Shown here: piece after piece, positions 10,755 to 39,449 of the stretch
How the letters are laid out: the number at the start of each line of letters is the position of its first letter
Position numbering within the stretch: position 1 is the stretch's first letter
From: Chara braunii
Lineage: Eukaryota; Plantae; Charophyceae
NCBI GenBank assembly: GCA_003427395.1
Contig: BFEA01000018.1
Span: forward strand, 5,015,602 to 5,071,942
DNA: 56,341 nucleotides
Direction of reading: 5' to 3'
Position numbers and translations under genes: made by a program
The notes under the pieces: model-generated
What the model was told of the DNA's origin: nothing
Seen by the model: the letters and a program-made list of their open reading frames with translations, nothing else
The model's database searches: none

Positions 10755-10786
<32 letters not shown>

Positions 10787-14295: not shown

Positions 14296-14763
14296 AGAAA
14301 ATGAAAATGAAATATCAAGATAGTAGAAAAATCGCCTTCATGATGAACTTGACTTAAAAAATTGTTGAACCATCACCAACCATCTTAAAAAATTAAACCG
14401 TAGACCGTGGACAAAATTCGCTACGCAAAATTATTGCAACAATAATATGCTCCATTCTGAATTCTCGTCCCTTCAAACAATTATTTTACAAAAATCTCAC
14501 TCCCCCACTCTATCGGGCGGACGTGCACTAATCGCTCTTGTCCCCTCCATCTACACTCCCTTCACCAGATGGACCNNNNNNNNNNNNNNNNNNNNNNNNN
14601 NNNNNNNNNNNNNNNNNNNNNNNNNNNNNNNNNNNNNNNNNNNNNNNNNNNNNNNNNNNNNNNNNNNNNNNNNNNNNNNNNNNNNNNNNNNNNNNNNNNN
14701 NNNNNNNNNNNNNNNNNNNNNNNNNNNNNNTCTCACTCCCCCACTCTATCCGACGGACGTGCA

Positions 14764-17859: not shown

Positions 17860-19505
17860 CACGGTCAGATTTATGCGTTGAGGGCACAGAGCTCGCCGGG
17901 ATCCGAATTTGGCGGGTGCAGGAGTAGCAAGGAACCTGTTTTTGCATGGCTTGTGTCAGTGGAAGGTAGCACCAGTGGGTGCACACAAGGAACGCTATGT
18001 TTGGGCGAACACAAGGAAGGATCTGTTGTCGGTGAACGATAGCGCATAGAACAAAGGGTAGTGGTGGATGCACTACTACACAATTCGACGCGGCGCGACC
18101 CCAAACTGACCCCCATAAACTCGATTCTCACCATCGTCTACGCGAGCTCGTGCAATTTTCCATTCACAGGTACTAGCGCAAGAGCTTATCGAACGCGGAC
18201 ATCCCCACTGCGTAGATAAGAAAAATGTAGAAAAGGATGAAAGATCCCCCCTTCAACCCTTCCAAATATTGATTCGGCCAGTTGAGAAGGCGACCCCCGA
18301 TTCTGCAACAAGACTCCGCACACCGCGACGGTCAAAAACCTTGGGGGGCAACAAAGATCGTGGGCGCGAAAAATTGCTCGCCTTCATAAATCCCCTCGAA
18401 GGGGTTAATGTGGGTTGCTGACGGTGACAACGGCCGTGTCCCTTATTTTCAGCAACCCCCATGAACCCCTTGAAGGGCATTTCAGAGGGCGAGCAATTTC
18501 TCGCACCCACAGTCCTGTCGCAATCAACTCACACTCGAAGCTCCAGGCGCCACGCAAAGGACGGATAGATTTGCGTCGATCCTCGAAGTCCGCCAGGATC
18601 CGAACTTGGTGGATTCGCCTGCATTTGTAACGGGTGGATGGCGTTTGCACAGAAGCAGGTGTTGCTCGGGCGCACCGCATTTTGGGGCGCCGATGAACGA
18701 AGATCCACGGCACACCAGAAATGGACCCGGCCAGCGACACCGTCGTCAACCCCAATAAACCCCTTTCAGGGCAACTTACAAGGCGAGCAATTTTGCGCAA
18801 TACCAGGCCGCCGACATTGAAGACGGACGGAGAAGTCCAAGCCGTTGAAAACAACGGTCAGATTCATGCGGCGCCTCGAAGTCCTCCGGGATCCGAATTT
18901 GGCCGGTGCTGGAGTAGCAAGGAACCTGTTTTTGCGCGACCGATGTCAGTGGAACGGAGCGCCAGCGGGTACACACAAGGAGCGCTATGCTTGGCCTCAC
19001 AGAAGGAAGGCTTTGCCACTCTCGAGTTGTCGTTGAACGTCAGCACGCGCAGAGCAAAGGGCAGCGGTGGATGCACCACCACAAAATCGGGCGCAGTGCG
19101 ACCCCAAACTGACCCCTAGTGCAAGAGTTCATCGAGATCGGACATCCCAACCGCGCAGACAAGAAAAATGTAGAAACCGATGAAAGACCCCCCTGCAACC
19201 CTTCCAAACCCCGATTCGGCTAGTCGACAAGGTGATCTCCGATTCGCGCGCCGGTAACATCGACGTGCGAAAGCGCGAACCGGAAACCACGTAGAAACAC
19301 GAGCATGTGTGCGACAAGAATCCGTGCACCGGGACGGTCAAAACCCTCTGGGGGCAACAAAGATCGACGGCACACAGACAAGGGACACGACCACTATCAC
19401 CGTCGGCAACCCCCACAAACCCCTTGAAGGGCATCTCAGAAGGTGAGCAATTTTTCGCACCCACAGTCCTCGTGCAGTCAACTCACACTTGAAGCTCCAG
19501 GCCTC
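17860..19505. repeat. ~1-kb-period diverged direct duplication upstream of the transposase
   Basis: 17861-18545 aligns with 18854-19500, e.g. ACGGTCAGATT.ATGCG, GGAGTAGCAAGGAACCTGTTTTTGC, GACCCCAAACTGACCCC. Confidence 0.85.
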
Positions 19506-21523
19506 ATGCGAGCACTTTTGCGTGCCCGGAGGCCTCTGGTAATCAGAACGCACTCGGCAGTCGTGTCCGTCGAAAACGGCGGTTAAATTTACGGGGGACC
19601 TCAAAGTCCGCCGGGATCCGAACTTGGCGCTTGCTGGACTGGCCAGGAACCGGTTTGCGCGGGGGACGACGGATATTTGGATGACCGGTGTGGAATTGCA
19701 CAGAAGGAACGCTAGGCTTGGCTGCATGTTCAGGGAGGCCCTGCTGCTGCTCACAAGTGTTTGTTCCAACAGAGCACNCAGAACAGAAATGGTCGTCGCA
19801 GGTGCACCACGTCGGAAATTGGCGCAGCGCGGCCCCCTATAGACCTCCATGGACCCCGATTCTCCTTATCGACAAAGTGAGCACTTGCGGCAATCCAGTC
19901 GCAAATGTTGCCATCCTTGATGACAATGACTGCAAGCACAAAAAATAAAAAAAACACGGCTGGTGGACCCCCGATTAGTATCGCAGACAAGGCGAGCTCG
20001 CAGTCGGGCAATGGCAGGTTCCACAGCCAGGTTCATGGGACCACGTACGGGTGCCAACCACGAAGTCCGCCCGGATCCGAACTTCAGATCGGTTGCCGCG
20101 TTCGACCGGGAGCATTAAACACTTTGTTTTTGCTGGGGTCCCGTTGGTAGGACTTTTTTTTTTTGCGGCAACGCCAACGAAAGAACAGTCATGCAACCAG
20201 GACTCTGAAAAGATCCATGCAAACCGTAAGCGTNNNNNNNNNNNNNNNNNNNNNNNNNNNNNNNNNNNNNNNNAACCAGGACTCTGAAAAGATCCATGCA
20301 AACCGTAAGCGTCTTATTTCAGCGACGCGGTCGAAACAACAATAATCATCCGAGCAGCCCGCGACTTCGCATGCTTCAGATTGCAAGTTCGCCGGGATCC
20401 GAACTTCGTCGCACGCTGAAAACTGGCATGGCGTTATGAACTATCGACCCCACGCCCGAAAGATGGGAACTGTGTCCCGCAAAACGTAGTCATCAGGGCA
20501 ACCTGGGATGGCATTGTGACTGCGAACGCGAAGTCAACAACCACAAAAAAAATGAGAACTTCGAATCCCGGCGAACTACAGCAATCATGCGCTATTTTCG
20601 CACCTGCGCGTGCTCTCCCTGCGGCCGCACAATGGCAACAGATTGCTGCTTTCGCGAGAGCACTGCGCATGATTGTTGTAGTTCGCCGGGATTCGAACTT
20701 CCCATCTCGCCAGGCAACCACATGCCACGCGCCGTTTTTCGTTTAACTGTTGTTGGTTTCGAGCTTGCGGTGACAATGGCGACCCCCCTTGCCCCGATGA
20801 CTGAGACGTTTCCCGGAGGCGGCCGGATTGTTCGTTACTGAACGAGGCCATGTTTTCGTGTCGAGGTTGTCATCACGAAACATGCGGCGCTCACGCCGAA
20901 GAAACGCCATCGTCATTGCAGCGAGCGGCGCAAACGTTCTCCATCGCACGCACGCAACGTGTGCATTCTTCGTTCTGGAGCCCGCGGATGTTGCACGCAC
21001 AGTCCTAGCATTTGTCGTGCGGAATGCGATATCGCATCCCTCACCGCCAGCGCCAGGAGCGCGCGCTCAACATCCATGGCCTCTATGGTGGATCATGTGC
21101 ACGTTGTGTGCGCGGGATGGAGACGACAGCAACTCTCCCGGGATTGACGCCATAGTCTCTTCGGGGAGGGAGGCTCAAGTGCTGCGGCGAGAACACGAAC
21201 ACGGAACGACGACCCCCTCCTGTTTATGAATACCTTACCTCTCACTACACGCCACGTGGACGGCAGACATCCTTCCCACCAAGGCCACCGCGCGACGCTT
21301 AGTACCAACAGCGGTCGCACGCAGCCCATCCGTCTCCTTTGTGATAACCAACCTCTAATCTCTTTGTTGAGAACATCAAACGAGCGACGGAAGTGTTTCG
21401 AAGGGGTTTCGTGTTCCGCTGGGAATAGGCGATTTCGCGTTTGCCTCGACCGCGCGGGAGTGGTTTGCAATGTCCAGCTTGTGATCAACGACAGTTTTTC
21501 TTCAATGCCAAGCCAAACAAGAG

Positions 21524-22477
21524 TTGTGGGGGCGGTCGAGTGGAACGAATGAGAGAGAAGCAGAACGGGACACACAAACCGTGTGCCCCGATGTCCACGT
21601 CATCCGATCCCGCCGTCCCAACCACTTGCGACACGTGGCACGACATGATGATAATGATGACGACGGTGATGAACACGATGATGGTGACGATTACGGTGGT
21701 GATGTTGATCAGGGCGACGATGTCGCTGCCGATGATGACGATGTTGATGACGATGATGATGTCGATGATGATGTTCGTGATGATGATGATTGTGATGACG
21801 ACGATGATGATGATGACGATGATGACGACGATGATGACGATGTTGATGATGGCGATGACAACGAAGAGGACGATGGTCGTGATTTTGATCACGGCGACGA
21901 TGTCGCTGATGATGATGATGTTGTTGATGACGTTGATGATGTTGATGATGATGTCGATGATGATGACGATGTTGATGACGTTGACGAGGTTGATGATGAT
22001 GATGATGTTGATGAAGATGATGATGATCACGATGACAATGATGGTGATGATGATGATGATGATGAAGATGATGACACTGATGGTGGCGGCGACGATGATG
22101 GTGATGATGGGGGCAATGATGATGGTGATGACGACAAGCAAGAATCACGGGGCCGCTCGCGAGGAAAGAACGAGCGGGAATCAGAAGGGGACACATAAAC
22201 CATGTGGCCCAATGTCACCGACATCCTTTCCCTCCGTCCCCACAACTTGGAACAGGTGGCGCGACGCGGCCGCTCCCATGGGCCGGCAAACATGCCTGAC
22301 ACGAGGGCAGGCAGAACAACACTTTACCTTGAAGAGGGCACAACGCACACGATGGCGCTGCTCTTTGACGGCTCACAGTTCTTCGAGCAGGCGCACTTCT
22401 TCGACGACGGCGAAGCGCACACGATGGGGCAACTGTTCGACAAGGGCTCAGCGCAAACGGCGGTGGCCACTTGCTGA
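21524..22477 (+). pseudogene. Highly acidic poly-Asp ORF with an internal duplication and one in-frame TAA
   Basis: ~500 bp of mixed GAT/GAC triplets in phase, flanked by ~100-bp direct repeats encoding similar peptides in the same frame. Confidence 0.45.
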
Positions 22478-23747
22478 CGCAGGACGCGGAGACGAGATGT
22501 CGAAGCGGAGACAACCGAACCACAGACGACAGTTGTCGACGAGAGGAAACCCCTGCGCCCACGCCTGCCGCCGCCTGGCGCAACAGCGGAGTAGAAAAGG
22601 CGATGGAGGATATCGCTGACGGGATGTCGAGCGCGAATGCGCTCGTCAGGCTTGAGATGCGAAAGGGCTGCCCCAGACCCGAGGCAGCTGAGCGTCAGAC
22701 TGTCGTCGCACCCCATGGAAAGACNNNNNNNNNNNNNNNNNNNNNNNNNNNNNNNNNNNNNNNNNNNNNNNNNNNNNNNNNNNNNNNNNNNNNNNNNNNN
22801 NNNNNNNNNNNNNNNNNNNNNNNNNNNNNNNNNNNNNNNNNNNNNNNNNNNNNNNNNNNNNNNNNNNNNNNNNNNNNNNNNNNNNNNNNNNNNNNNNNNN
22901 NNNNNNNNNNNNNNNNNNNNNNNNNNNNNNNNNNNNNNNNNNNNNNNNNNNNNNNNNNNNNNNNCCCGCGGTTCTCCCCCCTCACCCCTGGAAAGTACAA
23001 ACTGCCCCCCGCCGACACCTGAGACCCCCTCCACCGGGGCCCGCAAACCCGAAGACACGAACACGAGGGGCCCGGAACAAGGGCCCGTTTTCCAATGACG
23101 TCTGGGAAGGGCCAGCCCGTAGGGACGTTTTTGTCACATTTCGACGCACCAGGCCCCCCTCGCGACAATTTCGACGTGCAGCCACCGTTCGATGCGCGGA
23201 TCGAACAGCCGCGAGTCGGCGCGTGGACCCTGCACGGAAATCCGAAACGGAAGGCCCGAGGGGGCCTCCTGTCCCGCGCGCCTACAAATACGAGCGGCGC
23301 CCTAGGCATTGACGATGCGTTTTGTGTTTTTTGCTGAGGAGATGCTGCCCGACGGAAGCCACGCACCTCATTGTCGTCAACAGCTGGCGCGCCATAGCTG
23401 GCACAACCATTCTTCACCGCGCACGTTTCGTGGCACCGACGCACCCCACATGCCCTCGCATGTCCCTCCGCCCACCAAGTCGCTGTCCACGTCATATTCG
23501 ACGTCGCTTCCGATCTCCTTTCTCAGAAGGCACGACCGCCACCCCACACAGCACCCCAGCAAACGCGAAGTGCACGCCCAAAGGTGGACAGAGTGTCGTC
23601 ACGACAAATGTCGGGGTTCGCGCTCATCTTCACACGGTGAGTGCGCACGCAGTCGGGATGTATGTTTGCATGTGCGCGCGTGCGGGGGAGGTTTTTTGTG
23701 ACGATATGCTCGCGCAGATCGAAAGATTTCGTGGTTGCATGTGTGCG

Positions 23748-23748
23748 G

Positions 23749-23779
<31 letters not shown>

Positions 23780-23950
23780 TGTGCGATTGTGTGTTTGTGC
23801 ATGCTTCATTGTGTGTGTGTGTGTGTTCGAGTGCGTGTTCCTTTGTGTTTGTGTTTGTATTGAAGTGTGTGCCACACGCGCGAGGCAGGATCGTGCGCGT
23901 GTCTGTACCTGAGGGGCGTGTGTGTGCGGGCGCCGTGTGTCGGCGCGCGC

Positions 23951-24012
<62 letters not shown>
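23748..24012. repeat. (GT)n microsatellite region
   Basis: Directly visible. Confidence 0.95.
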
Positions 24013-24014
<2 letters not shown>

Positions 24015-25195
24015 CTGTTTGTGCATATGTGTTCGCATGCATGTGTGTTCGCGCGCGTTTTCCACGGGGAGATGCGCGCGAACATGCGCGGTCAGGGATG
24101 AACGTCATGGTAACGAAACACAACGTCATCGTGAGCACTTGCCATACCAGATTGGTTGTGTGCTGTCCCAATGTCATGTCCACCGATCTGCCCTATGGAT
24201 GATCAATCGAAACACGCGGTGGCAATGTCGACATAGCGAACGCATCCATCGACCAATCGCGAAACACGATGAGATCACTCGCGATCGGATGATTGGTCGT
24301 GTCTGCCGTGTCGACGTTACCACCGCGTGTGTGTTGTTCTTTCTGTCGTGTGTGTTCAGATCACTCGTGATCTGATGGTCGATCAGATCGATGACAATAT
24401 GTACACCACACACGTGATGAACCGACCCATCACGAAATGCAAGCCGACCACTTGCGATCGGGTGATAGATGCTGTTTGCTTCCCCAACAATAGCGCCGCT
24501 GATCTGCCCGACGGATGATTAACCAATGCATGAGGCGACAACGCATCCAACCGACCAATCGCGAAACGACAGAAGATTACTTGAGATCGGATGATTGATC
24601 GTGTGTGCTGCACCGAACATCAACCCGTCGGCGAGCGACCTATTTATTTACCCACCTGACAGTCCTCGACCGAACCGTCGATCGGTCAGGAAATCTGCCA
24701 TGATCAACTGATTGGTCGACAACTCGGTTGGCGATTGCTCTGTTGGTTGATCAACCACCACACCAACCGCCAACCGAGCAGTCGATCAACCAATCGACTG
24801 TTCTGTGCTAATTGATCGTGGAGAACGATCGTGGAGAATCCTCAAGGCAAATGATCATGTGCACGATCGAAACCGGCGAACGAAACGCACAACCGATCGG
24901 AAAAACGTCGATCCCGATCTTCGAACGAATAAAAAGCACTTCGTCACAATCTTGTTGCACATCGAACCTCGTATAACATCGAACCATGCTGCCCATGGAA
25001 CCTGGCTCCACATCAAACCTCGGCGGGCGTCGAACCTCGTCGGACGTCGAACTTTGGAGGACGTAGGGTCGTCGACACTTGACGGTCACTGAACGGCGAA
25101 CGTTGAGCACCCACCATCCCACGTGTCGTCGACACTGTTCTCGTTATCGGAACATGGCCGTTCCAACCGAACTGATCGCGCAATCAAACACCGGA

Positions 25196-25720
25196 AGAAG
25201 TTGGGATCTCGGCGAGCTTGTGCAGTTGTTCGAACACGCTTCTCAACCCCGGTGCGCAACCACAGCCAGGGACGTGGAAAATTAGAAGTCCGCCGGGATC
25301 CGAACTTCAAGAAATTGCTGGACGGCGAGTTTGGCAGACACGTGTGCATCTCCCATGCAATTTCGCCAAGTTCGGATCCCGGCGAACTTCATGCAGCTGT
25401 TCGAACACGCTTCGCAACCCCGGTCCCCAACCACAGCCTGGGACGTGCAAAAATTGGAAGTCCGTCGGGATCCGAACTTGAAGAAATTGTTGGACGACGA
25501 GTGTATGTCTCCTACACAATTTCGCCAAGTCCGGATCCCGACGAACTTCATGCAGCTGCTCGAACACGCTTCGCAACCCCGGTCCGCAACCACAGCCTAG
25601 GACGTGGAAAAATATGAAGTCCGCCGGGATCCGAACTTCAAGAAATTGCAGGACGGCGAGTTTGGTAGACAGGTGTGTATCTCCCACGTAATTTCGCCAA
25701 GTTCGGATCCCGGCCAACAA
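25196..25720. repeat. Tandem array of ~3 units of 160-170 bp, each with two oppositely oriented 22-bp palindromic motifs
   Basis: CGAACACGCTTC..AACCCCGGT..CAACCACAGCC..GGACGTG repeated at ~25231, ~25402 and ~25561. Confidence 0.9.
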
Positions 25721-26958
25721 ACCTCGCTCGCACTATTCCTTGCACACTCGCCGAGTCCGGACCTCGGCGAACCTCGGATCCGTAATAATGCGAAGTCCGC
25801 CGGGATCCGGACTTCTACTGCACGGTTCCTCGCACAGACATCAAGTTCGCACCCCGACGACTTCGCTTGTCTCAATATGCGGGTTCATAACGCGGGTTTC
25901 TAGCTCCCGAGGTTTGGCATAACTTTGTATTTGAAAAAATGTGTAGCCCGCCGGTTGATTCTCTCCCACGCGGTCTCGAGAAGTTCGGATCCCGGCGAAC
26001 ACCCTCCCGTGGATCCGGACCTCGCGTGGCAAGTTCGGACCCCGACGAACTTCGCGTTGCGCATGGTGTGGGTACTGATTGTGTCCTTTCTCGCGAACAG
26101 GTGTGTGCCACAACTTTTGTTTCGCAAAAATGCAAAGTCCGCCGGGGTCCGTACTTCTCGTGCAAAGGTTCCTCGTCCCATCGTCGGGTTCGCGTGCTGG
26201 GCCGTGGATCCGAACCAGCTGTCTTCTTTTCGCAATGCATGTGGCAGGAGATGTTCCTTTCGCAAGTTCGGATCCCGGCGAATTTGCCAAGTTCGGATCC
26301 CAACGAATTTGAGTTGTCTTCCGTTCGCAATGCATGTGGCAGGAGATGTTCCTGCTGGGCCGTGGATCAGAACCTGCCGTGCACAGTTCCTCAGACAATC
26401 GTAAATTTCGGATCACGGCGGACTACGGATTCTATAAAATGCAAAGTCCGCTGAGATCCGGACTTCCCGTGCACGGTTCGTCGGAAAACCGTCGACTTCG
26501 GACCCCGGCGTGCTTCACCTTTCGGGTGGTGCGGGTTCTGACTGCGGACTTCCTGGCGACCGGTGGATTGCCACAACTTTTTATTCGTACGAAATTGAAA
26601 TCCGCCTGGATCCGAACTTCTTGGCAGTTTTGGACGTCGGGTTTGGGAGACAAATTCGTCTTTCCCTCGCAGTCTCGCCAAGTTCGGATCCAGGCGAACA
26701 TGTCGCAGGGCGTGTTTGCGGCTGGCCCGCGGGCGGGTAGACGTCAACACCGACGAAGCTGGCCACCCAAAATCTGATCTTGGGGCATACACTGCGTCTA
26801 ATGCCATGGGTCGCTCATCGTGAGACATGACGCGTTTACGAGTGTCTCCATGCCCGTGTGTGTCGTCGGGCATGTGCGCGTGGTGTGCAGGTTGCGTGAT
26901 GGAGGGGACCTTCTCGACACCACGCATCTTCGAGTCGATCTTATCGAGACCATAGGCC

Positions 26959-27906
26959 ATGAGTGCCGAGACGCGCATTCGCTTGGCAGAACCTTTTCGT
27001 CCTTGTGCGAAATCCGTGCGGCATTTCAACGGTGTGACAACGATCCACGGAGCGACCGCAGAGGACTTCGACGAGGACCCATGGATGACCGTCGTCCCGT
27101 GCATGGACGCGCATGTTGACAACTGGGGCGAGGGCAATTGGGACAATATGGAGACTCACTGCCCTTGGGCAAGCCAGTACAAGTTCGCGAATATGTCGGA
27201 GTTCGGGGACCTCATCCCACTGCCTGACGCCGTCCTCGGACATAAGTTCCTGAACCATATGCGGAAAGCACTAAGCTGCATTAGCCGCTATTTCAGTCGC
27301 CTCGAGTGCCACAACGTCAGGTCATCGCCACAAACTTGGGGTGGCTCACGGAAACAAGAGTTGGTGGACTGCGCTCGTCGCTGCTCGTTCCTGGACCAGT
27401 ACCCGCTCCGTGGCCCCGGAATTTCTCCACGAGCTGTGTCGTACTGCTGTGTGCGGTTGACTGTGTCCGGATCTGATTTCGCCAGAGTTCTGTGTGTCGC
27501 TGCTTCAAACAAGAGCAGGAAACTCGTCGACGCAGTTGTGCTCGTGTCGCGCAACGAGGTTGTGATTGAAGGGTCCAAATTCGTGCCGATGCGTGGGCCT
27601 GAACGTGTGGATGGGTGGCCAGATTTGGTGATAGCAGGTCAGGTTCGAAACTATTCGTTGTTTCGTGAGGTTGAGGAGAAAGTGGCTGACATACAGGACT
27701 GCATAGGAAACTCCTTAGTAGGACCGGGGGTGTTTGTTAGGATGAAATACATGTCCGTTTTTTCGGATAGTGCATCGGTCAATGAACCGCAGACCCGCGT
27801 ATACGGATCGTCACTGAATGCTTTGTTTGGCTTCGGTTCACGACGTCGTCCCGGGGGATCCCCAAATGTCGCCACATCCGAACCGGTCTTTAGTCCTTCT
27901 GTTTGA
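26959..27906 (+). CDS. Transposon cargo orphan protein B (315 aa; paralog of 13384-14295)
   Basis: Intact ATG-initiated ORF with colinear similarity to protein A over ~260 aa. Confidence 0.82.
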   Translation: MSAETRIRLAEPFRPCAKSVRHFNGVTTIHGATAEDFDEDPWMTVVPCMDAHVDNWGEGNWDNMETHCPWASQYKFANMSEFGDLIPLPDAVLGHKFLNHMRKALSCISRYFSRLECHNVRSSPQTWGGSRKQELVDCARRCSFLDQYPLRGPGISPRAVSYCCVRLTVSGSDFARVLCVAASNKSRKLVDAVVLVSRNEVVIEGSKFVPMRGPERVDGWPDLVIAGQVRNYSLFREVEEKVADIQDCIGNSLVGPGVFVRMKYMSVFSDSASVNEPQTRVYGSSLNALFGFGSRRRPGGSPNVATSEPVFSPSV

Positions 27907-29225
27907 GGGAAAAGAACGACGAGGGACGAGATGCGGTTGTGTTGCCTAACATGTGAGATTTGTAGGACTGCAGAGAAGTGTGAGACTCCGCGGTTGCTGG
28001 TACACGCTGCACCGCGCGCTTGTCGTGCAAATCCCTGGTCGTCGTTCGGTTCAGTGACATGACAAAAGTCATGTTGGACGTCCGTCTCTGACGCCGTCTC
28101 CTGCCATTTCGTGCCCCGACGAAGTTCGGATCTCGGCAAACTTCGCATTCTGGCCTCTCCGTTAATTTGTCTCTGATGTCATTGGCGTCGGGCGGGCCGC
28201 GGGAAAGACCCCTCACCGCGGAAGGATCTGCCCGTAACCTGTTTTCGCCCGTCCACCATCAACGTGTGCCAAATTGTCAGTCACTGTCGTAGCGAGATGC
28301 CAAAAGCACTCTTAGAGATCCCCGTCGCAAGGTCGCGCGAGCTTCGCGTTTCCTGAAACCCGTTGGAGATCCTGGTTGGCGGGCCCTCTTGTTGGAAATC
28401 CTGTTGGCACCGTGCTAGGACACCGTGCTAGGACCCCAACTTTCTGTCTGTCTCTCTCGCAGCCTCCTGAAGTTCGGATCCCGGCGAACTTCCTGTGACG
28501 CCTGTGTATTGAACGGGCGCTGGGCTTGATGATCCCCCGTGGATTGCGGCACGAGTCAAACCGTGATCCACAACTGCTCCTCCAGGGACTCATACAATGT
28601 TGTCACGGCTGCTCGTTCGAACTTGGCTTCATCCAATGCCAAGTTGCGCATATCAGAAGAAGTTCGGATTTCGGCGAACTTGTCCTTCTCAAGCGGCCTT
28701 TTGTGTTAGTGCGGCCTTTCCGGGTCGTGGTTCAGTCCAATCTGTGTTTGCCTGACGCCGTCTCTGCCTATTGCATTTTCCTGAAGTTCGGATCCCGGCG
28801 AACTTCACGTTTCGGTGGGTGCGTTGGTTTGGCTTCGGACAGGCACTTTTAGTACGGATCTCGGCGAACTTCGCGTCATGAACTGTCCGGGTTAATATTG
28901 CTAAACAAAGGACACTGCCCCGTCCAACGTGGGCTTTGTGCGTCACCACCCGTCCATTCCCGATCCGGTGGCCATCCGTGTTCCGGAAAAAACCGACGTG
29001 GTTGTCGCCCGACTGCATGAAGCGTATGCCCTTGTAAAGAATGATCTCGTTGCAGGTAAGAGGTCATTGCTGGTCTTCGCGTTAGAAGTTCGCGGGATCC
29101 GAACTTCGAGGTCCTCGGATAGCGTCATGTGACCGACGTGTTGAGGGCAAGGTGTGCCTCCTCTGTTTTTGGCATGCGTTGTGCTTTGACTGCGATTTGA
29201 TCGCTGGTGTTTTATTTGTTTTCCG

Positions 29226-32200
29226 TTGTCGTCCGCAGACAATATGTCTTCGTCCAGGGGCGAAGGGGAGCCTGCAGCGACCTCCGGGATGGGATCTGGG
29301 AAAAATTCTACAAAACGGCCGTCTACGACCTCGAGGACGTGGTCCGACCACGCTAGGTCGAAATGGTTCGTCGACTGGTGCTGTGCTGATGCTACGAACC
29401 CAGTCCAACAGCCGTGTGGTTCTGTGATCTTCGTCGAAGCCAACAAGCGCCGCAGGGTTCTGGGGGCTGTCTTGCGGTGGGAGAATGCGAAAGGCAGTCG
29501 TCGACGGTTTTACATGAAAAATGTGTACGGTTCGAAGGGGAACGCCGTAGCCGGTGCCAAGGGGGCAGTTCTCGACATGTGTCTGTTCGAGGGGTTCGGA
29601 GCGGGTGCTGCAAACACCCCGTTCTACAACGACCTCCGGCAGCAGGGCGGGTTTGTTTTGGGTCGACAGTTCTTCGACCTGTTGGAGGACAAGGGCATTG
29701 CCCTCGATGTCCCTTGTGAAGTCGGTCCCGACCTGGAACTGTCAATGCCTTTGCAGCCGTGCGGCGGTTGTGAGTCGAGCGGGGCAGCGGGGGAGGGGGG
29801 GGATCTGGGTTCCGGGGAGGCTACACATGTGCAGCGGGAGGATGCCAGAGGTCAGTTTGACGACAAAGAAGATGAGGCGATACCGCGTCCGCCGTTTTCG
29901 CCGTCGAGGGAAAGAGACAGGTCCGTGCTGTCCATACCTGGGGTCCGGCAACAGACCGCAGCGGATCCCGGAGAAGAGGGAGTCCTGTGTGGGTCTGACT
30001 TGGAGCCCGCCGAGGGCCATGGCGCGGAAGGCGAGGCCGTGGGCGGGGAGGAAGTGCGGGGCACTCCCCAAAAAAGGAAGGGACAATGTCAAGAAGAGTT
30101 GGTGGGATCTTCGAAGAAACAGAAGACCAAGACCCCGAGGACTGTGGGAGAGAAACGGAAGGGGAGGGGGGTGGAAGAGGGCCACCCGGATAGCAAACCT
30201 CCAGCTTCGAAACATAAACAGCCTGAGTCGGGACCTTCTTCACCGCGGCCTGCCATCGACGTGGACGCCGGGTACGTCATGGAGTACAAAGACGGCGTCA
30301 GGACAAGGTGGGAGTTTGAGATCAGCCCGGCTCAGATCGTTGACATGAGGGAGTGGGAGGATCTTTACAACCAGCGGTCGCTAGATCCTGTCCTCGTGGA
30401 AACGATAAGGGAAGCAATGCGGTCTGCGTTCGAAAATAAAGAACAGACGTACGAGTTGCCGGTCTTCAAGCTCGCACCACTGGGGCTTCAAAAACCAACT
30501 CCTGGGACCAAGGCACAACGTCTGAAGCCAGAGGAGTGGAAGGATGAGCTGGTGGGAGAATACTTCTACTACGCGGTGTGCGGGCAGCACAACGCGGCTG
30601 CAGCTAGGTCGCTGCTCGGCAGCGAGGTGGCCAAGAAGTACAATTTCGAGCGGTGGCCGGCACGGATGGTGTACTTTTCCGACGATGACTTCGAAGGGTA
30701 TTTTCTNNNNNNNNNNNNNNNNNNNNNNNNNNNNNNNNNNNNNNNNNNNNNNNNNNNNNNNNNNNNNNNNNNNNNNNNNNNNNNNNNNNNNNNNNNNNNN
30801 NNNNNNNNNNNNNNNNNNNNNNNNNNNNNNNNNNNNNNNNNNNNNNNNNNNNNNNNNNNNNNNNNNNNNNNTTCTATGAAAGACATTCGATGGCAGTGGA
30901 AGCATGACGGCTGCCCGAGAGCTGTGATGGGGAACCCTAGCGGAAAACAAGATCAGGTCCGGGCTTGGCGTAAGTTTTGTACAATGGCGCTCTGTAAGGC
31001 GCCTCAAAACAGCTTGTGGCTTCTCGCGGATCAAAAGGAAGAGGAGGCCATTAAGAAGCAAAATGCTGCCCTGCGTTCTAACTTACCTCTGGCGATGGCC
31101 GGGGAAAATGTCTGAAAACTGGCCGTGGAATTTTTCGAAAAATGGGAGACGGGCAGATTGCTGAGCCACAATGGGGCGAAGTGGACCGTCAAAAAGAAGA
31201 AGGTCAAAAACGTAATGCCTGGGGTCGCCTACATCCACAACGACAAATTGGGCAGAACGGAGGTGGTGTACAACGTCCCCGTGGACCCGCCGAATAAAAA
31301 GGGCAAAAAGGAGAAAGAGGAGGGCGATTGGTTCGTGCAAGTGCCAGACCCGGATGCGCATTGTTGAAAAGCAATGGAATCACTCACGGACAATGAGAAG
31401 TGTCGCGTTCTGAAAAAGGTTCTTGCTTGCGAGGTCGTTTGGGTCCAAGCCGGCTCCCCGTCGTTGGGGAAGTTGGAAAAGCTCAGCGTGCAGGACATGG
31501 TTCAGCTGGTGAAGTGTGACCGCGTGCTGGTCCGGTTGTGGAATTACTACCAATTCAAGCACGAGAAGAGGCCGGACGCGGACTGGATCCAAAGGTACCC
31601 TTTCCTGAAATCGAGGTCTGCCGTGTTCAAGAAGTTTGAAGGTCAGGGATTGGATGACGAGTTATGGGATAACAGCAGGAAACACGTTTCCGACTCGGCG
31701 TTGTTCAAGGACTGCCCGCCATACAAGGGTTGCAACTAGGACAACTCGATTGAGGTGACAAAGAAGTTGGCGGGCCACAAGAAGTTGTCCGTCGACTGAA
31801 GAAACAAGGTTCTCTCCGTGTTGAATGGAAGCAGACTGAAGAGCCGGGAAGTAGCACTTGCCGAAGGCATCGTTCACATTAAATGGAAAGACGCGGGGAA
31901 CGTGACATCCATCGCGCCGTTCGCCAACGACCCTTTAGAGGCGGACATCAGGGGCGCAGAGCTGAAGGAGGCAGTGACTGCCACAAAGAGCCACACGTTT
32001 GTCCTCGATCTGTGCGAGCCGGTTGACCTCAAACTGTGGAAGCCCCAAGCGTGGGAGACTTTGAATTCCTATCTTCAGACGTGGTGTCCCTCGCATTGGA
32101 CTCTCGTTGTTTTCGTGCCGCGGCAGCACAACCTGTCGTTTCTCGCCAGCATGCATCATCTTTCTTTCGTCAAGCTGTTGGAAGGGAAGTGGGTGCGGAG

Positions 32201-34460
32201 AGTGCAGCAAAAAAAAAGCTTCCCCGTTGGGAACAATTTGTACACGGAGGAAGACCGCATGTACATCCTCTTCAAGGGTGACGATCTGCGCGTCAACACG
32301 TCCGTGGTCTACGAGGGAAACCTGCCCACGGGTGCCGCTGCTGCGGTGCGATTGCCTCAGAGGGTCACCCAAACGGATGTGTCCGAGATTCCTTTAATGC
32401 CTTGCGACTGGTCGCTGGTGGCGCCTGAACGACAGGGCAACGTCTACGGGGATATGGATCGCAATCCGACCCAATTCGTCGGTCTTCTTGATTTTCTTGG
32501 CAAGAAGGGAGAGGGTGTCGTGTTCCTTGGGAAACCGCACGCGCGAAGCGTCTGGGAGCTTCTGAAGGCCGGTCGGCTTGTTGTCGCAATGGAAGGGAAC
32601 TCCGACCTCTTGCAATTCACAATGCAGGTGGTGAAAAGCGAGGTCAATTCGAGTGGGCACAATTATGAGTTCATGGTCGTGAGGCCAACACGGGATAAGG
32701 TGTGAAGCAAGAAGACGGATATGTGGTTCAAGTTGAGCGAGAGGAAGAGGAACAAGATATACGATTTCTTGTTCCTTCAAACGCGTCCGAGGAGGGACAC
32801 TGACGCCGAGTACATCCGCCGGAAGGACCACATGTTGGCACCCCTCGACAACTACCACTTCGCCTCCCGCATGAACGCGAAGACGTTTATCGAAAGGCTG
32901 CGGTCGCTGTACTTCGTGGAGTCCGAGGAGCAGTTGAAGTTAGCCAGTTACGCTTCCCTGATCTCCACTGACGACGAGGAAGCCATAGGTGTGGAGTTTG
33001 TCGCCAACGCGAAGGAGGAGGAAAGCGACACGGAGAGCATCAACCTGTAGTACGACCCGCCTCCGGCGGACCACGGCCGAGGGTCCTCGTCGGCCGGTCC
33101 ATCACCAAGCGCTGCAGCCCTCGTGTCACCATTGGCCAAACCGGCGTCGGGCACCACCCCGATGAAGTTGCTGGAGAGACTTAGAGCTCTGGCCGCCCCC
33201 CCACCCGCTTTGCGTCCCGGGTCCGTTGTCCCGCCTGATCATCCATCTTGGAAGGATGACAACATCCACTTCCTACTTGAACCGCAACGTCATTCACCTG
33301 AGCAGGACTGGGGCCATGACATGGTTTGGCATCCGGGAATCATCCAGCCAGCGATACGAAATGGCGAGTGGGTCATGGGCGTGGCAATCCCGGGCGCGGG
33401 ATGGGTGTCATTCCCACGCGAGTCGAAGTCCAACTTCCTGCACCTCGCGAGGATTTCTGTCCTCCAGAAAGTGAAGGTCGAAAATGACACTTTAGCACCC
33501 AGCGACCTGCCCCTCATTTTCACTGCCGGTCGACTGTTTGACGAGCTTCAGGACAAGTGCTGGTTGGAATTGACGGAGGACTACTACGAGCTCGACACGA
33601 GTCCGTCGAAGGGCGTGGTGGACTGGAAAGCGCCCCCTCCCAGTGGGCCGGACGGTGGTTCCGGGGGGGGGTCACCTGGAAGCAGAGGGGATGGGGGTCG
33701 CGACGCAGGGGGTGGCAAAGGAATCCCGCCTATGGGGGAGAGAGGGTCTCACGGCCGCAACACAACACCGGGAGGCAGCGCCGGGGTAGCGGGTTTCGCC
33801 GTCGACCGGACTCCGTCAACAGGCACCCGGCCCGAGCACACGACACACTCCGCCGACCCCCAGACTTCGTCCGTGGGCTCAGCGAGGGACACGTTGGCAG
33901 CCTTGGTTGCTCTGGGCAGTCGCTCGGCCAGAAAGCCGAAGTCCGCCAGGATCCGAACTACGTTGGGTGAGGAGCCGCCAGAGCGGTCCGGAATGCGAAG
34001 CTGCTTTGGGTCGGGGGATCCAAGCACGAATCGAGAAATTCGCAGCATTGCGGCGCGGGACTGAGACGTCGGAACGGTGTCGCCTGAGCGGGAGCGACGG
34101 CCGCAAGGATTGCAGCGGGAGGCTGCAAGTGCAAGGTCCGGCGACACGGAGACCACGAAGTCCGCCGAGATCCAAACTTCTTCGGGCGGGGTTTGTCGGC
34201 CAGGGATTGTCGTGCCGTTGAGAGGGGCAGCGTGCACGGGGACGGAAGGGCGGTCCTCGCGATTCGACACGGGTACCGCGGAAGGGGACGAGTTTCGTGG
34301 GAGGGAAGTAGGGGAGGAAATGGAGGAACAGAAGGGAGCGCAAGAAGGGGAGGAAGAAGGGGAAAAAGAGGTGGAAGGGGAGGAAGCGGGAGAAACTGAG
34401 TTAATTGATTTGTTTGAAGGAAGGGAGGGTGCCTGGAGAAGACGAAGTGGAACACAGTGA
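29226..34460 (+). pseudogene. Large cargo gene: ParB/Srx-like domain plus degenerate beta-class amino-methyltransferase-like domain
   Basis: ORFs starting at 29226, 31125, 31374, 31818, 32721, 33123 and 34077 share one frame, separated only by 7 point stops (N gap at 30707-30871). ParB-like ISPAQI..NQRSLD..VETIREAM..YAVCGQHNAAAAR; MTase-like motif order at ~31990-32630. Confidence 0.75.
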
Positions 34461-35250
34461 GGACGATGCCGGATCTGGAGAGTCGTCTGACGAGTTCGGA
34501 CAACTGTACGAAGAGCATCACGAGGATGATGTCGACGACGATGCCACGACAATAGAGATGGAGACACAAGTGGTCAACAACCTTTCCGCAGAGCCTGAAG
34601 GCCATTGACGTCTGCTGTCGACTTGCAGCACCGGTTCGACGAGGCTTCCGTCGATATCAGCCCGTCTGAAAAAAGTCGACGTATAAGCATCGACGAAGTT
34701 ATCGACGGTATCCTCGGCGACCACAACATGTCTGCCCGTCTGTCCGCAACTGCCAACGTCCCATCTTCCGTGGCAGCTGCCCTCGCTTCGTCGCCGCCGA
34801 AGTCTCTGGTGCTGCAGGCCACCCTTGCCGCCGAAGTCTCTGGTGCTGCAGGCCACCCTTGCCGCCGAAGGGGAAGGCGAGTGCGATGGAGGACAACATG
34901 TGACGTCCCCAAAAAAATCGAGGTTCGGCGGTCAGGCTCTTGACGTGCTCGCTTTGCCTGCGCCAAATTCACCATCGAAGAAGCGGAGAGAGAAACAGAC
35001 TGGTAAGCCGTGAAGAACGCCTGCGCATCCGGATGTCGCCAGATTACAGTCCGCACTATACAAACGACGACTTTCCACACTGTCTGTGCATACGGGAAGT
35101 TCCGGATGCCGGCATGCTACAGCCAGCAGCCCTTCCTACTCCAACTCGTCGGCCTATCTGTGACTCGGTCGGGTTGCTAGTCGAGGGCGGCGAAAACTTC
35201 GTCCAAAACCTTACACTCCATCCAAGGAAGGATTTGCCCCGGCTGAGGAA

Positions 35251-35930
35251 GTGGCCAAGGTGCTAAGAAAGTGACCAAGTACATGGACTGACAGTTTTCC
35301 CTTCTCGGGAATACTGTCGATTTTAGTCCGCCGGGATCTGAACTTCCTTTGTCGATGCGTGATGTGGTCAGTCTCAGTGGGGCTGGTGTGTTGAAAAGTC
35401 CGCCGCAGTCCAAACTTCGGGGATTGCTGGCCTCCGGCTTCTGTGAGTTGTGGTGGTTTTCCTTTGCGAAGTGCGGGGGTTGATAAGCTCGAATGTTGCA
35501 GTCGTTTTGTTTTCCAGTCGCACAACCGCACATGGGTGCACATGACCACGCGAGATCAGGGTCCTGTGGTTGGAGAGGTCCTACTTCACTGTAGGCCAAG
35601 GTGCTAAGAAAGTGGCCAAGCACATGGACTGACAGTTTTCCCTTCTCGGGAATAGTGCCGGATCTTAGTCCGCTGGGATCCGAACTTCCTTTGTCGATGC
35701 GTGATGTGGTCAGTCTCAGTGGGGCTGGTGTGTTCAAAAGTCCTCCGCAGTCCGAACTTCGCGGATTGCTGGCCTCCAGCTTCTGTGAGGTTTGGTGGTT
35801 TTCCTTTGCGAAGTAAGCGGGGTGATAAGCTCGGATGTTGCAGTCATTTTGTTTTCCAGTCGCACAACCGCACCTAGGTGCACATGACCACGCGAGATCA
35901 GGGTCCTTGGGTCGGAGAGGTCCTGCTTGA
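35251..35930. repeat. ~340-bp tandem duplication, two palindromic motifs per unit
   Basis: GGCCAAGGTGCTAAGAAAGTG.CCAAG.ACATGGACTGACAG at ~35253 and ~35594. Confidence 0.9.
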
Positions 35931-36284
35931 CTGTTGCGTCTGTACGAATGTATGGTTCTCATTTTTCGTTTTGTCTTTCTTCTGTTGCACATGGTTGGTG
36001 TCGTCTCGAACACGGAGGTCCTCCAAATATCCAGAGCACATATTGCAGAAAGTCCCCGGGTTGAGTAAAAAACACAAGGATATGTTAAAGGCATCAGGGG
36101 TTGATGTCGAGATCGGGAAGAAGGAGTACACCGTTGCCATTGAGGAATGTCTTTCCCTTCTTGCCCCAGAGAAAGGGACATATCCACGATCTGTGAGTAG
36201 GGGTCAGGCCATGTATGAGAAGTACTTAGCAACGCGTCATGCACCGGGGGACTATGTCTAGAACTCCGTTTCTCACTACCCCAC

Positions 36285-37067
36285 GTGTCCTTTGCTCGAT
36301 GTTGTGCAGTGCGGGCAACAAGTGCAGCACGCGGGAAAAGTTTCGCTTTGACGATTACGCCTATGAGCTTGCGGGTTTTGGATGACATTGTACGAGGCTC
36401 GGTGCCGTCTAACACTATTCTCTCTATACTGGACGATGGTCAATTTCGGATTGTAGCAAAAGATCTCCTCACCCTCTTGCATGTCAACGACAGGGTGAAT
36501 GATGAGGTGGTCAATTTCTATATGGCGTTTTTGGGGTCGACCGCATGTGGGTCACGTGACTTCTCTTCAGACCTTCAAGTCTTCAGCTTTAATTTGTTCT
36601 TCTTCAGTAAACTGTGACTTCAAGGACACGGTGGGGTGCAGAGGTGGGCTACAAACGTAGATTTGTTTCGTTACGATATTATCTTCGTTCCTGTCCACAA
36701 AGATGATGATCACTGGATCCTCGTTTTCGTCAACATGAGAGATGATGTTCTCGAAACTTTTGATTCTTTTCCTCGCATTGTAGCTGATTCTAGTTTTTAC
36801 CTTAGTGTTTTCGGGTTGATTGTGCAGTATTTGGAACGTCTAACATCACGTAGGCGGTCGGGTAGGAATTGGAAGTTCATGGTGGGAAATGTTGTGGTGG
36901 ATGGAGTTCCGAGACAAGTGGATGGAACAAGCTATGGTGTGTTCATGCTGATGTATGCGACGTTGTTGCAACATGGAGATCGACCGCCTTTTCGGTTCTC
37001 TTGTAAAAATATTCCGCTTCTTAGACGACAATTAGCATCATGTGTCTTAGAACATCGTTGTCTTTGA
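36285..37067 (+). pseudogene. Ulp1/SENP-like C48 cysteine protease, inactivated
   Basis: NDEVVNFYM, FN.FFFSKL, DLF.YDIIFVPVH, HWIL, TFDS and PRQ.DG.SYGVF motifs; in-frame TGA at 36615; the catalytic Cys position reads Tyr. Confidence 0.9.
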
Positions 37068-37649
37068 TGGATTTGATTGACTTCGAAACTTTTTTTTAAG
37101 GTGTTTCATTCATTGATCGTTAAATTTCGTAAATTGAGACATTATTTAATTGCCCTTCTGCCAGAGGCATTGCTTTCTTTTATCGTTCCGAGTTCGCATT
37201 ATCTACGGTAAGCTCAATGCATGTCCTGCGTCATGTATGGGCTTTGTAATCTATGTCACGTAATGTTTCATGTTCTGAATTCTGTTCAAGTTGAAGTATT
37301 GTGTTCCATGTTTCGAATTCTGTTCAACTGGAAGTGTAAACATGATTGTGAAATTGGTTGGTGGATGAATGAGAAATCTCATCTTATGTGAAATTGGTTA
37401 GTGGATGCCCAAACCTTCTTTGCATGACCATTTAAAATGCGGATATTCATCGTGATGGAGCACAATTTAATCTAATTCAATCTAATTACATTGCTAATTT
37501 TGTTTACAAAAGTTCAACAACTATGGATGTCAGCAAACTTTTGCGTTTGGGGCGACTGAACGGGCATGCCCATGTACAAACACTGCAGTCAAAAATGAAT
37601 TCGTAAGAAAGAGGACAGTGTCACAATATAGTTACTGTATCTTTCATCA

Positions 37650-37885
37650 CATTTATGAAATTGAAGTTTGACAAGTTAGAATCACGACACACTTTCGCAC
37701 AGGGTTCCCTTTGGTGTGCCAATCGTTGTTCGTTTATGAAGTTTGACTAGTACGGATCCCAACACACTTCCCCACAGGATCACCAACATGTTTTTGAAGT
37801 TCAACAAGTAAGGATCCCAACACACTTCCACATTTGGGATTTCATTTATGAAGTTTCACAAGCATGGATCTCAGCACGCTTCTAC
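37650..37885. repeat. Right subterminal repeats (TGAAGTTT.AC.AG..GGATCCCAACACACTT-like, ~4 copies)
   Basis: Units near 37662, 37737, 37795 and 37849. Confidence 0.7.
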
Positions 37886-37964
37886 ATGTGGTTAACCCCT
37901 GGATGGGCATGCGTACGTTGCTTAGGCTGCAACCAAAAATTAATTCGTTAGAAAGAGGACACAG

Positions 37965-37990
37965 TATAATGTCCTATTTTAACGAATAAC
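37965..37990 (-). repeat. Right TIR
   Basis: TATAATGTCCTATTTTAACGAATAAC, reverse complement of the left TIR with one mismatch. Confidence 0.95.
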
Positions 37991-39449
37991 GTATTTTGGG
38001 TGGTGCGGGCAGACAGACTCCGTGTTGAGATGACTGTATGCCCTGCATTTAAAGCACCACGGACGAAATTTACGTGAAGTGTGGATCTGAAAGACTCGCC
38101 CTCCCATTCGATAGGGGACGATGTCATCAATGGAGAAAGGCTGGTCTTTGGGCAAGTCTAGAGCCAGCATCAGATAGTCGTCGCGCTTCGCCACGAAGGA
38201 GGGAAGTGGGTCGATGAAGTCGACAATGTTACACTGTTGACCAAAGTCGTAGACGAAGGCCGCCTGGATTTCCACCGGGATATGTCTCAATTCAACCCAG
38301 AAGTGGTCCCTCATCAATTGCTCCCGCTTCTCCTCCGGACTCACCTTTTTGGGTTGCCAGGGATATATTCTCACTTCCGAGCGTTCCCATTTGATCGACC
38401 TCCTTCCTTCCATCTTCTTTTTGTCTTGGGGGAAGAGGCTGAGGACGGTGAACACGGTTGAGGAGAGCGGTTGAATCAGGAAGAATTCCTGAACCGCCTC
38501 AGGGTTGCCTTTCATCTCCTCTAGCCTTTTGTGTATCCATCTGAGTTTGTCGTTCACAAATCTGTGTGCTATATCGCCGAGAAAGAGCTAATTGCTGGCA
38601 TGCCGGCGATAGGTGATGTCCCTGTCATCGATTTTGTCAGGGGGGTATGTTTTCATCATTGTCTTTCTCCCCCCTTGATCCACCACTTGGTTTTGGGAAG
38701 GGAAGGAAGAGGGTCAAGAAGTATGCCCTCGCCGACGAAAGGTTACGGAGGGGAACTTTCAGCGTCTCGTCTTTGCCCTGTTGTAAGTCTGGGGCGGTGC
38801 GCTGGATATCAAGAAACTTTTCTTGAATGGTTGTTCTGACGCGTTGGGCCCATGTGGGCTTAGTGCCCTCGTCTTTGCCAGGGTGGTCGACACCGGTAAT
38901 TAGCTTTCGCTGCCTTTTTTCCTGGGTCAGTTCCTCTTCCGTTAACATCTCTTCATCTGCTACCTCCTTGTCATCTTCCTCCTCTTCCTCATCTTCGCTT
39001 CCACTGTCGTCCTCCATTTTCTCTTCCATGTCCCCCCCTCCACCCCCCCCTGTCAGTGCCGTATTGCTTTTCTCGTGAGGAGCCCCTCCGCCCCCCCTTG
39101 TCAGTGTCGTATGGCTCTTCTCGTGAGTAGCCCCCCCCTGAATGAGGGAGGAATGGGTCAGCGGAATGACCTGTTCAATCGGAGACGGATTCGGCTCTGA
39201 CTGGGTGGTCAACGGAACCACTTGCCCTTTAAAGGCTTCAGATGGGTTCGGCCATCGGTTCGGATCTAGGGGGTGCAAGTCCAAGCGCNCGNCCGNCCTG
39301 GGGAGAGTTCCTCCAGGCTTCGGCCTGCCGTACGGAGACACTGCCAGCCGTCTGGTGGGGTCGTGTCTCCCTGCCCCCCTGTAGAAGATAAGGGGGTGTA
39401 ACGCTCTCCGGCCCTTAAGGTCTTGGTCAACCGAGCGTTCCATAGTCAT
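37991..39449 (-). pseudogene. LINE ORF1, 5' half (DUF4283-like region plus zinc knuckle), frameshifted
   Basis: FWVELRHIP motif and CFKCRAYSH..C knuckle typical of plant L1 ORF1; ends at the right TIR. Confidence 0.82.

What the first reader, a model, noticed from the sequence alone, without database searches (positions are those of the whole stretch)
30300..30706. ParB/Srx-like domain in a eukaryotic transposon cargo protein
Seen: ISPAQIVD..NQRSLDPVLVETIREAM..LPVFKLAP..YYAVCGQHNAAAARSL..WPARMVY. Known: the ParB/Srx N-terminal fold reads roughly I...I..(N/Q)PR..D..V..L..SI..PI.V..Y.IIDG.HR..AA..L..VP, and bacterial ParB loads on palindromic parS sites in a CTP-dependent way. The G.HR arginine is Asn here, so nucleotide hydrolysis may be altered or lost. 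Inference: a prokaryote-type domain recruited by a plant-lineage transposon.
Basis: partly seen in the sequence, partly recalled or inferred. Interest (0 to 1): 0.8.

Follow-up and report, generated by a model that had tools for sequence, protein, structure and literature searches.

The report
Arginine-less ParB domain in algal transposon
This is a dead copy of a real bacterial/phage-type ParB domain inside the extra gene of a 25.7-kb jumping gene of the stonewort Chara; the design was already reported in brown and red algae, and this version lacks the arginine that tested relatives need to bind nucleotides, so it probably serves as a scaffold rather than a CTP switch.

Summary
Family-profile scans miss it. 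The domain lies in a broken accessory gene (ParB, beta-class methyltransferase-like fold, downstream Ulp1) of a complete 25,687-bp Sola1-type transposon of Chara braunii with 31-bp TIRs, a 4-bp TSD and 34+ internal palindromes. The missing arginine is not decay: 0 of 55 homologs have it, an uninterrupted copy keeps GQHN, and dN/dS is about 0.2-0.3. Nor is it unique to this transposon: many phage ParB-like proteins read GQHT or GNHT. All 11 published binders in a fold-wide screen keep that Arg, so canonical CTP clamping is unlikely; a scaffold role on element-specific palindromes is my best reading (untested). ParB-methylase cargo in Sola1 is published for Ectocarpus, and this scan found the family repeatedly on other DNA. 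Side lead found in no held paper: the N-terminus of Starship DUF3723 also looks ParB/Srx-like and keeps the Arg; close kinship with the Chara domain was not shown.

The parts
12309..37995 (.). Complete Sola1-type DNA transposon copy, 25,687 bp, inserted in ORF1 of a LINE
   Evidence: Colinear full copy L001; ends and TSD read; removing the element and one TSD restores the LINE ORF1 frame
12305..12308 (.). Left 4-bp target site duplication TTGG
   Evidence: L001 has CTTT on both sides
37996..37999 (.). Right 4-bp target site duplication TTGG
12309..12339 (+). Left terminal inverted repeat, about 31 bp, starting AAC
37965..37995 (-). Right terminal inverted repeat, about 31 bp
   Evidence: same end in L001, L002, L025
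14764..17106 (-). Sola1-type transposase, 780 aa, open frame (Pfam DUF7869)
   Evidence: E 1.3e-55; three Asp motifs match those of Ectocarpus Sola1-1 transposase by eye
29244..35013 (+). Accessory gene, pseudogenised: N-terminal domain, low-complexity linker, ParB-like domain, helical linker, methyltransferase-like fold, acidic tail; premature stops at 31113, 31365, 31737, 31797, 32703, 33048, 34062 and frameshifts after about 34400
   Evidence: start and end inferred from sister copies
30309..30706 (+). ParB/Srx-fold domain (the finding); its last helix lies in the N gap 30707-30871
30369..30377 (+). NQR motif, probable counterpart of the ParB Q-x-R segment
   Evidence: N 53/55, R 46/55; equivalence inferred from motif order
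30582..30593 (+). GQHN, Box II (GxxR) position without Arg and without the catalytic Glu
   Evidence: G 53, Q 54, H 51, then N 30 / T 22 / R 0 of 55
31872..32680 (+). Beta-class amino-methyltransferase fold; motif IV reads D-L-C-E-P instead of DPPY, motif I reads F-L-G-K-x-H instead of FxGxG
   Evidence: model; Foldseek E 2e-6 to CcrM; Z 15.8 to M.BceJIV; column counts
36399..37067 (+). Ulp1/C48 SUMO-protease-like gene, one stop, Tyr at the usual catalytic Cys in this copy
   Evidence: Pfam PF02902 E 2.6e-16 on the part after the stop; translation
13384..14295 (-). Orphan ~300-aa gene, paralog of 26959-27906
   Evidence: about 44% identical to its paralog; no Pfam family
26959..27906 (+). Orphan 315-aa gene upstream of the ParB gene
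17889..20700 (.). Palindrome array A (8 sites) upstream of the transposase
   Evidence: 34 matches in the window, 0 expected, all inside the element
25198..28871 (.). Palindrome array B (22 sites) around the orphan gene, upstream of the ParB gene
33939..35687 (.). Palindrome array C (4 sites) in and after the tail of the ParB gene

Best explanation
The stretch is a genuine ParB/Srx-fold domain of an Arg-less (GQH[N/T]) type, the second folded module of a ~1,400-1,900-aa accessory protein that a family of giant Sola1 transposons has carried under purifying selection through its radiation in Chara. This copy is dead. Shown: fold, motif pattern, selection, fixed linkage to the transposase, subfamily-specific palindromes. 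Inferred mechanism: the protein acts on its own element. A dimer reads the element's internal palindromes through the methyltransferase-shaped domain and/or the helical linker (not through the ParB domain); the ParB domain supplies dimerisation or oligomerisation without a canonical CTP cycle, so several dimers coat or bridge the arrays next to the promoters, and together with the linked SUMO protease keep the element expressible or help assemble it for transposition.
For: Fold. Arg absent in 55/55 while G, Q, H, the upstream N-x-R and the downstream (D/E)N are kept at 25-90% overall identity. Uninterrupted 1,419-aa copy with GQHN followed by Ulp1. dN/dS 0.20-0.27 for the domain in the two informative pairs, like the methylase fold (0.21-0.29) and transposase (0.30-0.36). 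Same layout in subfamilies whose transposase and ParB identities fall together: 90/87, about 75/67, 52/42, 37/31%. Palindromes differ between subfamilies and lie inside, not at the termini. Arg-to-Ala abolishes binding in ParB and in 11 diverse binders, all of which keep the Arg (PMC8367383; PMC12704722). The methylase fold lacks PPY and FxGxG.
Against: No binding or biochemical data. The pocket residues N27, R29, H100, N145 are kept almost invariantly, which suggests a ligand rather than a bare scaffold. The linker between ParB and methylase folds was not folded, so an HTH is neither shown nor excluded. Palindromes were not clearly better conserved than their flanks between close copies. The palindromes could be bound by the transposase or the orphan proteins instead. 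Residue equivalence rests on motif order and aligned ranges, not on a residue-level superposition.
Confidence: 0.5

Rival explanations
1. The domain still binds a nucleotide or other phosphate ligand using R29, H100 and N145, and works as a ligand-gated dimer or sliding clamp that loads at the palindromes and spreads over the 25-kb element.
For: Near-invariant pocket residues; closest structural matches are clamp-type ParB/PadC/Noc/KorB, aligned through the Box III helix, above Srx and SerK; Arg-less GQHT/GNHT phage families are abundant, so the variant is viable.
Against: Box II Arg is required for binding in every tested case; catalytic Glu is Gln; no HTH or C-terminal dimerisation domain shown; nucleosomes would hinder sliding (own knowledge).
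Confidence: 0.22
2. The protein is an active self-marking DNA methyltransferase (N4C/N6A) with unusual catalytic motifs, as proposed for Ectocarpus Sola1; the ParB domain regulates or spreads the mark.
For: Strong beta-class fold; motif IV Asp kept in 17/19 and the motif I Gly in 22/24; palindrome cores contain GATC or GANTC, typical amino-methylase targets; phage GNHT-type ParB domains occur fused to N6_N4 methylases; PMC12477816.
Against: PPY and FxGxG are missing throughout the Chara family, also in the uninterrupted copy; GATC/GANTC cores arise easily in palindromes.
Confidence: 0.13
3. It is a DndB-like autoregulator: it binds the arrays beside the transposase and accessory promoters and represses them, limiting copy number, rather than shielding the element from host silencing.
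For: Best named Atlas structural neighbour is DndB (TM 0.57); GQH resembles DGQHR; arrays A and B lie in the region between the divergent genes.
Against: DndB keeps the Arg and binds ATP/GTP; no sequence similarity to DndB profiles; a linked SUMO protease fits anti-silencing better (inference).
Confidence: 0.13
4. Chance resemblance, contamination, or a passively carried dead fragment.
For: Every family-profile scan is negative and no single Foldseek hit reaches E 0.001.
Against: All top structural hits in four libraries are one superfamily; 94 homologs, 17 of 20 checked from Mb-scale Chara scaffolds; TSD-flanked insertion; dN/dS well below 1.
Confidence: 0.02

Closest known systems
Ectocarpus Sola1-1_Ec32 accessory gene (PMC12477816)
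   Same: Giant Sola1 element (21.5 kb), AAC termini, 4-bp TSD, accessory gene on the strand opposite to the transposase, ParB-like plus N4C/N6A methylase domain; same transposase motifs.
   Different: Chara protein is longer, its methylase motifs are degenerate, and the element adds Ulp1, two orphan paralogs and palindrome arrays.
Bostrychia Plavaka accessory gene PAG3 (bioRxiv 10.1101/2025.02.11.637652)
   Same: ParB-like domain in a giant eukaryotic DNA transposon, next to arrays of inverted repeats, proposed to bind its own element.
   Different: EnSpm/Plavaka host element; ParB fused to a 2OG oxygenase, with the methylase in a separate gene.
Canonical ParB CTPases (M. xanthus, C. crescentus, B. 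subtilis ParB; Noc; KorB; PadC)
   Same: Fold over 94-100 residues, Z 8-9, rmsd 2.2-3.2 A, order of the three motifs.
   Different: GQHN for GERR, two insertions of about 10 and 30 residues, no HTH, C-terminal dimer domain or ParA partner shown.
Phage orphan ParB-like proteins with DGQHT (DUF6551 and unnamed) or AGNHT (ParB_N, some fused to N6_N4 methylase)
   Same: Arg-less Box II and an (N/Q)R-x-L-D...V helix; HHalign 93.8%, pairwise E 1.7e-7.
   Different: That comparison is biased because the phage set was picked by the motif; with it masked only the first helix matches (P 0.0025). No donor identified.
DndB / DGQHR family
   Same: GQH; Atlas TM 0.57.
   Different: DndB keeps Asp before and Arg after GQH; no profile hit.
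Starship DUF3723 (PF12520) N-terminal domain
   Same: Nearest named clusters by language-model features (0.95); itself ParB-like; also a conserved accessory gene of giant eukaryotic transposons.
   Different: Keeps G-x-H-R (Arg 74/74); profile comparisons with the Chara domain and linker are not significant.
VANDAL/VANC anti-silencing systems
   Same: Transposon-encoded accessory protein with element-specific internal repeat motifs (as summarised); Ulp1-type cargo is also known there (own knowledge).
   Different: Mutator host and unrelated protein; analogy only.

Membership tests
ParB/Srx superfamily | ParB/Srx N-terminal fold | tested here: met
ParB/Srx superfamily | Detectable by Pfam ParB_N or other curated profile | tested here: not met
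   0 of 55 members hit
Canonical ParB CTPase clamp | Box II GxxR arginine | tested here: not met
   Asn/Thr, Arg 0 of 55
Canonical ParB CTPase clamp | Catalytic Glu of GERR | tested here: not met
   Gln 54 of 55; role of E102
Canonical ParB CTPase clamp | Box III EN..R helix | tested here: met
   (D/E) 44, N 51, K/R two residues later 49 of 55; in this copy hidden by the N gap; exact register inferred
Canonical ParB CTPase clamp | HTH DNA-binding and C-terminal dimerisation domains | tested here: inconclusive
   No Pfam/NCBIfam hit downstream; the linker was not folded
Canonical ParB CTPase clamp | ParA partner gene | tested here: not met
   None among the ORFs scanned in the element
Canonical ParB CTPase clamp | CTP binding, hydrolysis and loading at palindromes | not testable with these tools
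   needs biochemistry
DndB/DGQHR family | DGQHR motif | tested here: not met
   [ACSN]GQH[NT]
Sulfiredoxin | Conserved catalytic Cys before His-Arg | tested here: not met
   that position is Gln; the preceding Cys of this copy is variable (14 of 55)
Sola1 DNA transposon | Transposase with Sola1-type three-Asp motifs | tested here: met
   motifs match Ectocarpus Sola1-1 transposase by eye; no tree or Repbase search
Sola1 DNA transposon | TIRs and 4-bp TSD | tested here: met
   TTGG in the window, CTTT in L001; AAC termini as in Sola1-1_Ec32
ParB-methylase transposon accessory proteins (Ectocarpus type) | ParB-like domain fused to an amino-methyltransferase fold, opposite the transposase | tested here: met
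ParB-methylase transposon accessory proteins (Ectocarpus type) | Canonical catalytic motifs (D/N/S)PP(Y/F/W) and FxGxG | tested here: not met
DUF3723 (Starship accessory) | Profile similarity to PF12520 or to a DUF3723 alignment | tested here: not met
   only language-model feature similarity

The most novel reading that the evidence does not exclude
ParB/Srx domains are a recurring self-recognition and assembly module of giant eukaryotic transposons of unrelated superfamilies (Sola1 in Chara and Ectocarpus, Plavaka/Zisupton in red algae, and, unreported so far in the papers searched, Starship DUF3723 in fungi), some as real NTP-gated clamps (Arg kept, DUF3723) and some, as here, using a different ligand or none; they would help such very large elements hold, protect or excise their own DNA.
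Probability: 0.25. Interest if true: 0.8.

Novelty: new variant of a known kind. Interest (0 to 1): 0.45.

Why it matters
It extends a barely described class of transposon accessory proteins (ParB plus DNA-modifying fold) to the streptophyte lineage, with a variant in which both borrowed enzyme folds have lost their standard catalytic motifs yet stay under selection, and with matching subfamily-specific palindromes that make a clean cognate versus non-cognate binding test possible. An uninterrupted natural copy exists for such work. It also points to a large untested class of Arg-less ParB domains in phages, and gives a concrete fold and a mutable arginine for the unexplained Starship gene DUF3723.

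Tried and rejected
Pfam, NCBIfam, PHROGs and PDB sequence/profile searches of the domain: nothing. Word search with the short domain: blank because of the length filter; with the alignment only Chara fragments. tblastn of the intact domain against phages: only E 7. Idea that the Chara domain and DUF3723 are one family: not supported by HHalign or HMMER. Palindrome conservation against flanks in close copies: inconclusive and biased by motif picking. RNA: 197 reads in one of three poly(A) runs, only one at 99% identity or more, both orientations, so no evidence that this copy is expressed; weak transcription of sister copies or DNA carry-over. Contamination rejected. Three papers recalled by id were not held, so the original Sola and ParB/Srx superfamily definitions were not read. 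Short degenerate motifs recalled from memory were used only as DNA scan patterns; hits were then verified with Pfam.

Full report
Observation. It belongs to a long frame that starts near 29244, is cut by a 165-N gap at 30707 and runs on with premature stops at 31113, 31365, 31737, 31797, 32703 and 33048, another at 34062 and frameshifts after about 34400. This copy is therefore dead. Sister copies show that the gap hides about 58 bp.

Family. Pfam, NCBIfam, PHROGs and PDB sequence searches are blank. The exhaustive protein search gave 94 relatives; 17 of 20 looked up are Chara braunii gene models on long scaffolds and three come from JGI metagenome contigs. One of these, P0041, is an uninterrupted 1,419-aa frame followed by a Ulp1 gene; its organism is not recorded.

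Fold. An AlphaFold2 model built from 55 aligned domains (first row an 88% identical sister that spans the gap) has pLDDT 85.7. Foldseek ranks 1-42 in the PDB are all ParB/Srx members, though none reaches E 0.001. The independent wide search gives PadC Z 8.3, KorB 7.4, pNOB8 ParB 7.0, SerK 6.8, SbnI, Srx, SspE, Osa, Spo0J and BrxU as ranks 1-12, with unrelated rows at Z 2.2 or less. The second look gives M. xanthus ParB Z 9.1, rmsd 2.2 A over 94 residues. Viral and Atlas libraries agree.

Motifs. Across 55 homologs: N 53, R 46 in the upstream N-x-R; G 53, Q 54, H 51, then Asn 30, Thr 22, Arg 0; (D/E) 44 and N 51 in the last helix. Asn and Thr sort by clade. The uninterrupted copy reads GQHN. 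In C. crescentus ParB, R60A, R103A, R104A, N136A and R139A lose CTP binding and E102A loses hydrolysis (PMC8367383). In a fold-wide screen all 11 nucleotide binders keep the Box II Arg and lose binding when it is mutated (PMC12704722). By motif order the Chara domain keeps counterparts of R60 and N136, has His for R103, Gln for E102 and Asn/Thr for R104; this equivalence is inferred, not superposed. So canonical binding and hydrolysis are both unlikely, but the pocket is conserved. The Arg-less state is not special to the transposon: DNA pattern scans of viral contigs returned over 120 GQHT and 45 GNHT matches, most in ParB-like frames, named by Pfam as DUF6551 or ParB_N, some fused to N6_N4 methylases. 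The Chara profile matches the GQHT set at 93.8%, but only the first helix matches once the selecting motif is masked (P 0.0025), so no donor is claimed.

Context. The gene lies in a 25,687-bp element (12309-37995) with 31-bp TIRs and a TTGG duplication, inserted in ORF1 of a LINE whose frame is restored when the element is removed. L001 is a colinear full copy with its own 4-bp duplication. The transposase (DUF7869) has the same three Asp motifs, AAC termini and 4-bp duplication as Ectocarpus Sola1-1. Downstream of the ParB domain is a beta-class amino-methyltransferase fold (Foldseek E 2e-6; Z 15.8) that keeps the motif IV Asp but lacks PPY and FxGxG, and further on a Ulp1 gene. Four other subfamilies keep the accessory gene followed by Ulp1, three of them also with the divergent transposase in the fetched flank, and transposase and ParB identity fall together. 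dN/dS of the ParB domain is 0.27 against L001 and 0.20 against L025, close to the methylase fold and the transposase; the closest pair gives 0.54 on few changes and deeper pairs are saturated. The window holds 34 copies of a 22-bp imperfect palindrome, none expected by chance, all inside the element and none at its ends; L025 shares the motif, while L022, L023 and L024 each have a different one.

How it most likely works. Shown: fold, motif pattern, selection, linkage, lineage-specific sites. Inferred: a dimeric accessory protein recognises its own element's palindromes through the methylase-shaped domain or the helical linker, and the ParB domain joins subunits without a canonical CTP cycle, coating or bridging the arrays beside the promoters and, with the SUMO protease, favouring expression or transposition (0.5). 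Rivals: a clamp gated by a nucleotide or other ligand held by the remaining residues (0.22), an active self-methylase with odd motifs (0.13), a DndB-like self-repressor (0.13), artefact (0.02). RNA data do not show this copy expressed; one run has sparse diverged reads along the gene, including reads entering the gap that encode the EN motif.

Comparison. A ParB plus methylase accessory gene in a giant Sola1 element is published for Ectocarpus (PMC12477816), and a ParB protein beside inverted-repeat arrays for red algal Plavaka elements. Earlier notes of this scan describe the same Chara family several times on other DNA; I checked their main claims here except the liverwort and fern relatives. 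The finding is a new variant of a known kind.

Side lead. Language-model features put the domain next to the N-terminal part of fungal DUF3723, a conserved Starship accessory gene. I fetched DUF3723 proteins: their N-terminal domain has G-x-H-R with Arg in 74 of 74 and a downstream E-x-Y-x-N helix; weak phage tblastn hits include genes annotated ParB-like (E 0.03); its Atlas model neighbours ParB_N clusters at TM about 0.5. No held paper names both terms. Profile comparisons with the Chara domain are not significant, so this is a probable shared fold, not shown kinship.

Verdict. Real, correctly recognised, under past selection, dead in this copy, design already published, mechanism untested. 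Interest 0.45.

Noticed in passing
L020:4579-5133, L004:1219-1890, L008:755-1588; P0100-P0219: The N-terminal ~170 aa of Starship-type DUF3723 proteins look like a ParB/Srx domain with an invariant G-x-H-R arginine (74/74) and an E-x-Y-x-N helix; Pfam's model starts inside this domain. No held paper links DUF3723 to ParB.
   Followed up: partly
L028-L192 (IMG/VR contigs): Large phage families of ParB-like proteins with Arg-less Box II (IDGQHT, VAGNHT); some are fused to N6_N4 methylases, one (L192) to a methylase plus a 2OG-hydroxylase-like domain. None of the published nucleotide binders is of this type.
   Followed up: partly
L026:1-6445 and L193 (JGI sample 3300064063): A metagenome holds an uninterrupted 1,419-aa ParB-methylase-like gene followed by Ulp1, about 40% identical in the ParB domain; a second contig of the sample has a related gene split by one stop. 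Organism unknown.
   Followed up: partly
window 17889-35687; L022, L023, L024: Subfamily palindromes differ but their cores contain GATC (window, L022) or GANTC (L023, L024), typical targets of amino-methylases; may be chance.
   Followed up: partly
window 12309-37995 versus flanks: CpG observed/expected is about 1.0-1.2 across the element against about 0.6 in the left LINE part and the rest of the window (0.82 in the right LINE part); could reflect youth or long-term escape from methylation; no age-matched control.
   Followed up: partly
window 13384-14295 (-) and 26959-27906 (+): Two orphan paralogs, about 44% identical, both kept in L001; no Pfam family.
   Followed up: no
window 29346-29750: A conserved small N-terminal domain precedes the ParB domain in many subfamilies; no Pfam family; not folded.
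   Followed up: no
window 7002-12304 and 38000-39449 (-): A LINE (ORF1 with zinc knuckle, endonuclease PF03372, reverse transcriptase) split by the transposon insertion.
   Followed up: partly
window 14495-14811 and 20195-20312: Sequence is duplicated on both sides of N gaps, and the gap at 30707 is oversized: assembly artefacts that inflate element length slightly.
   Followed up: no
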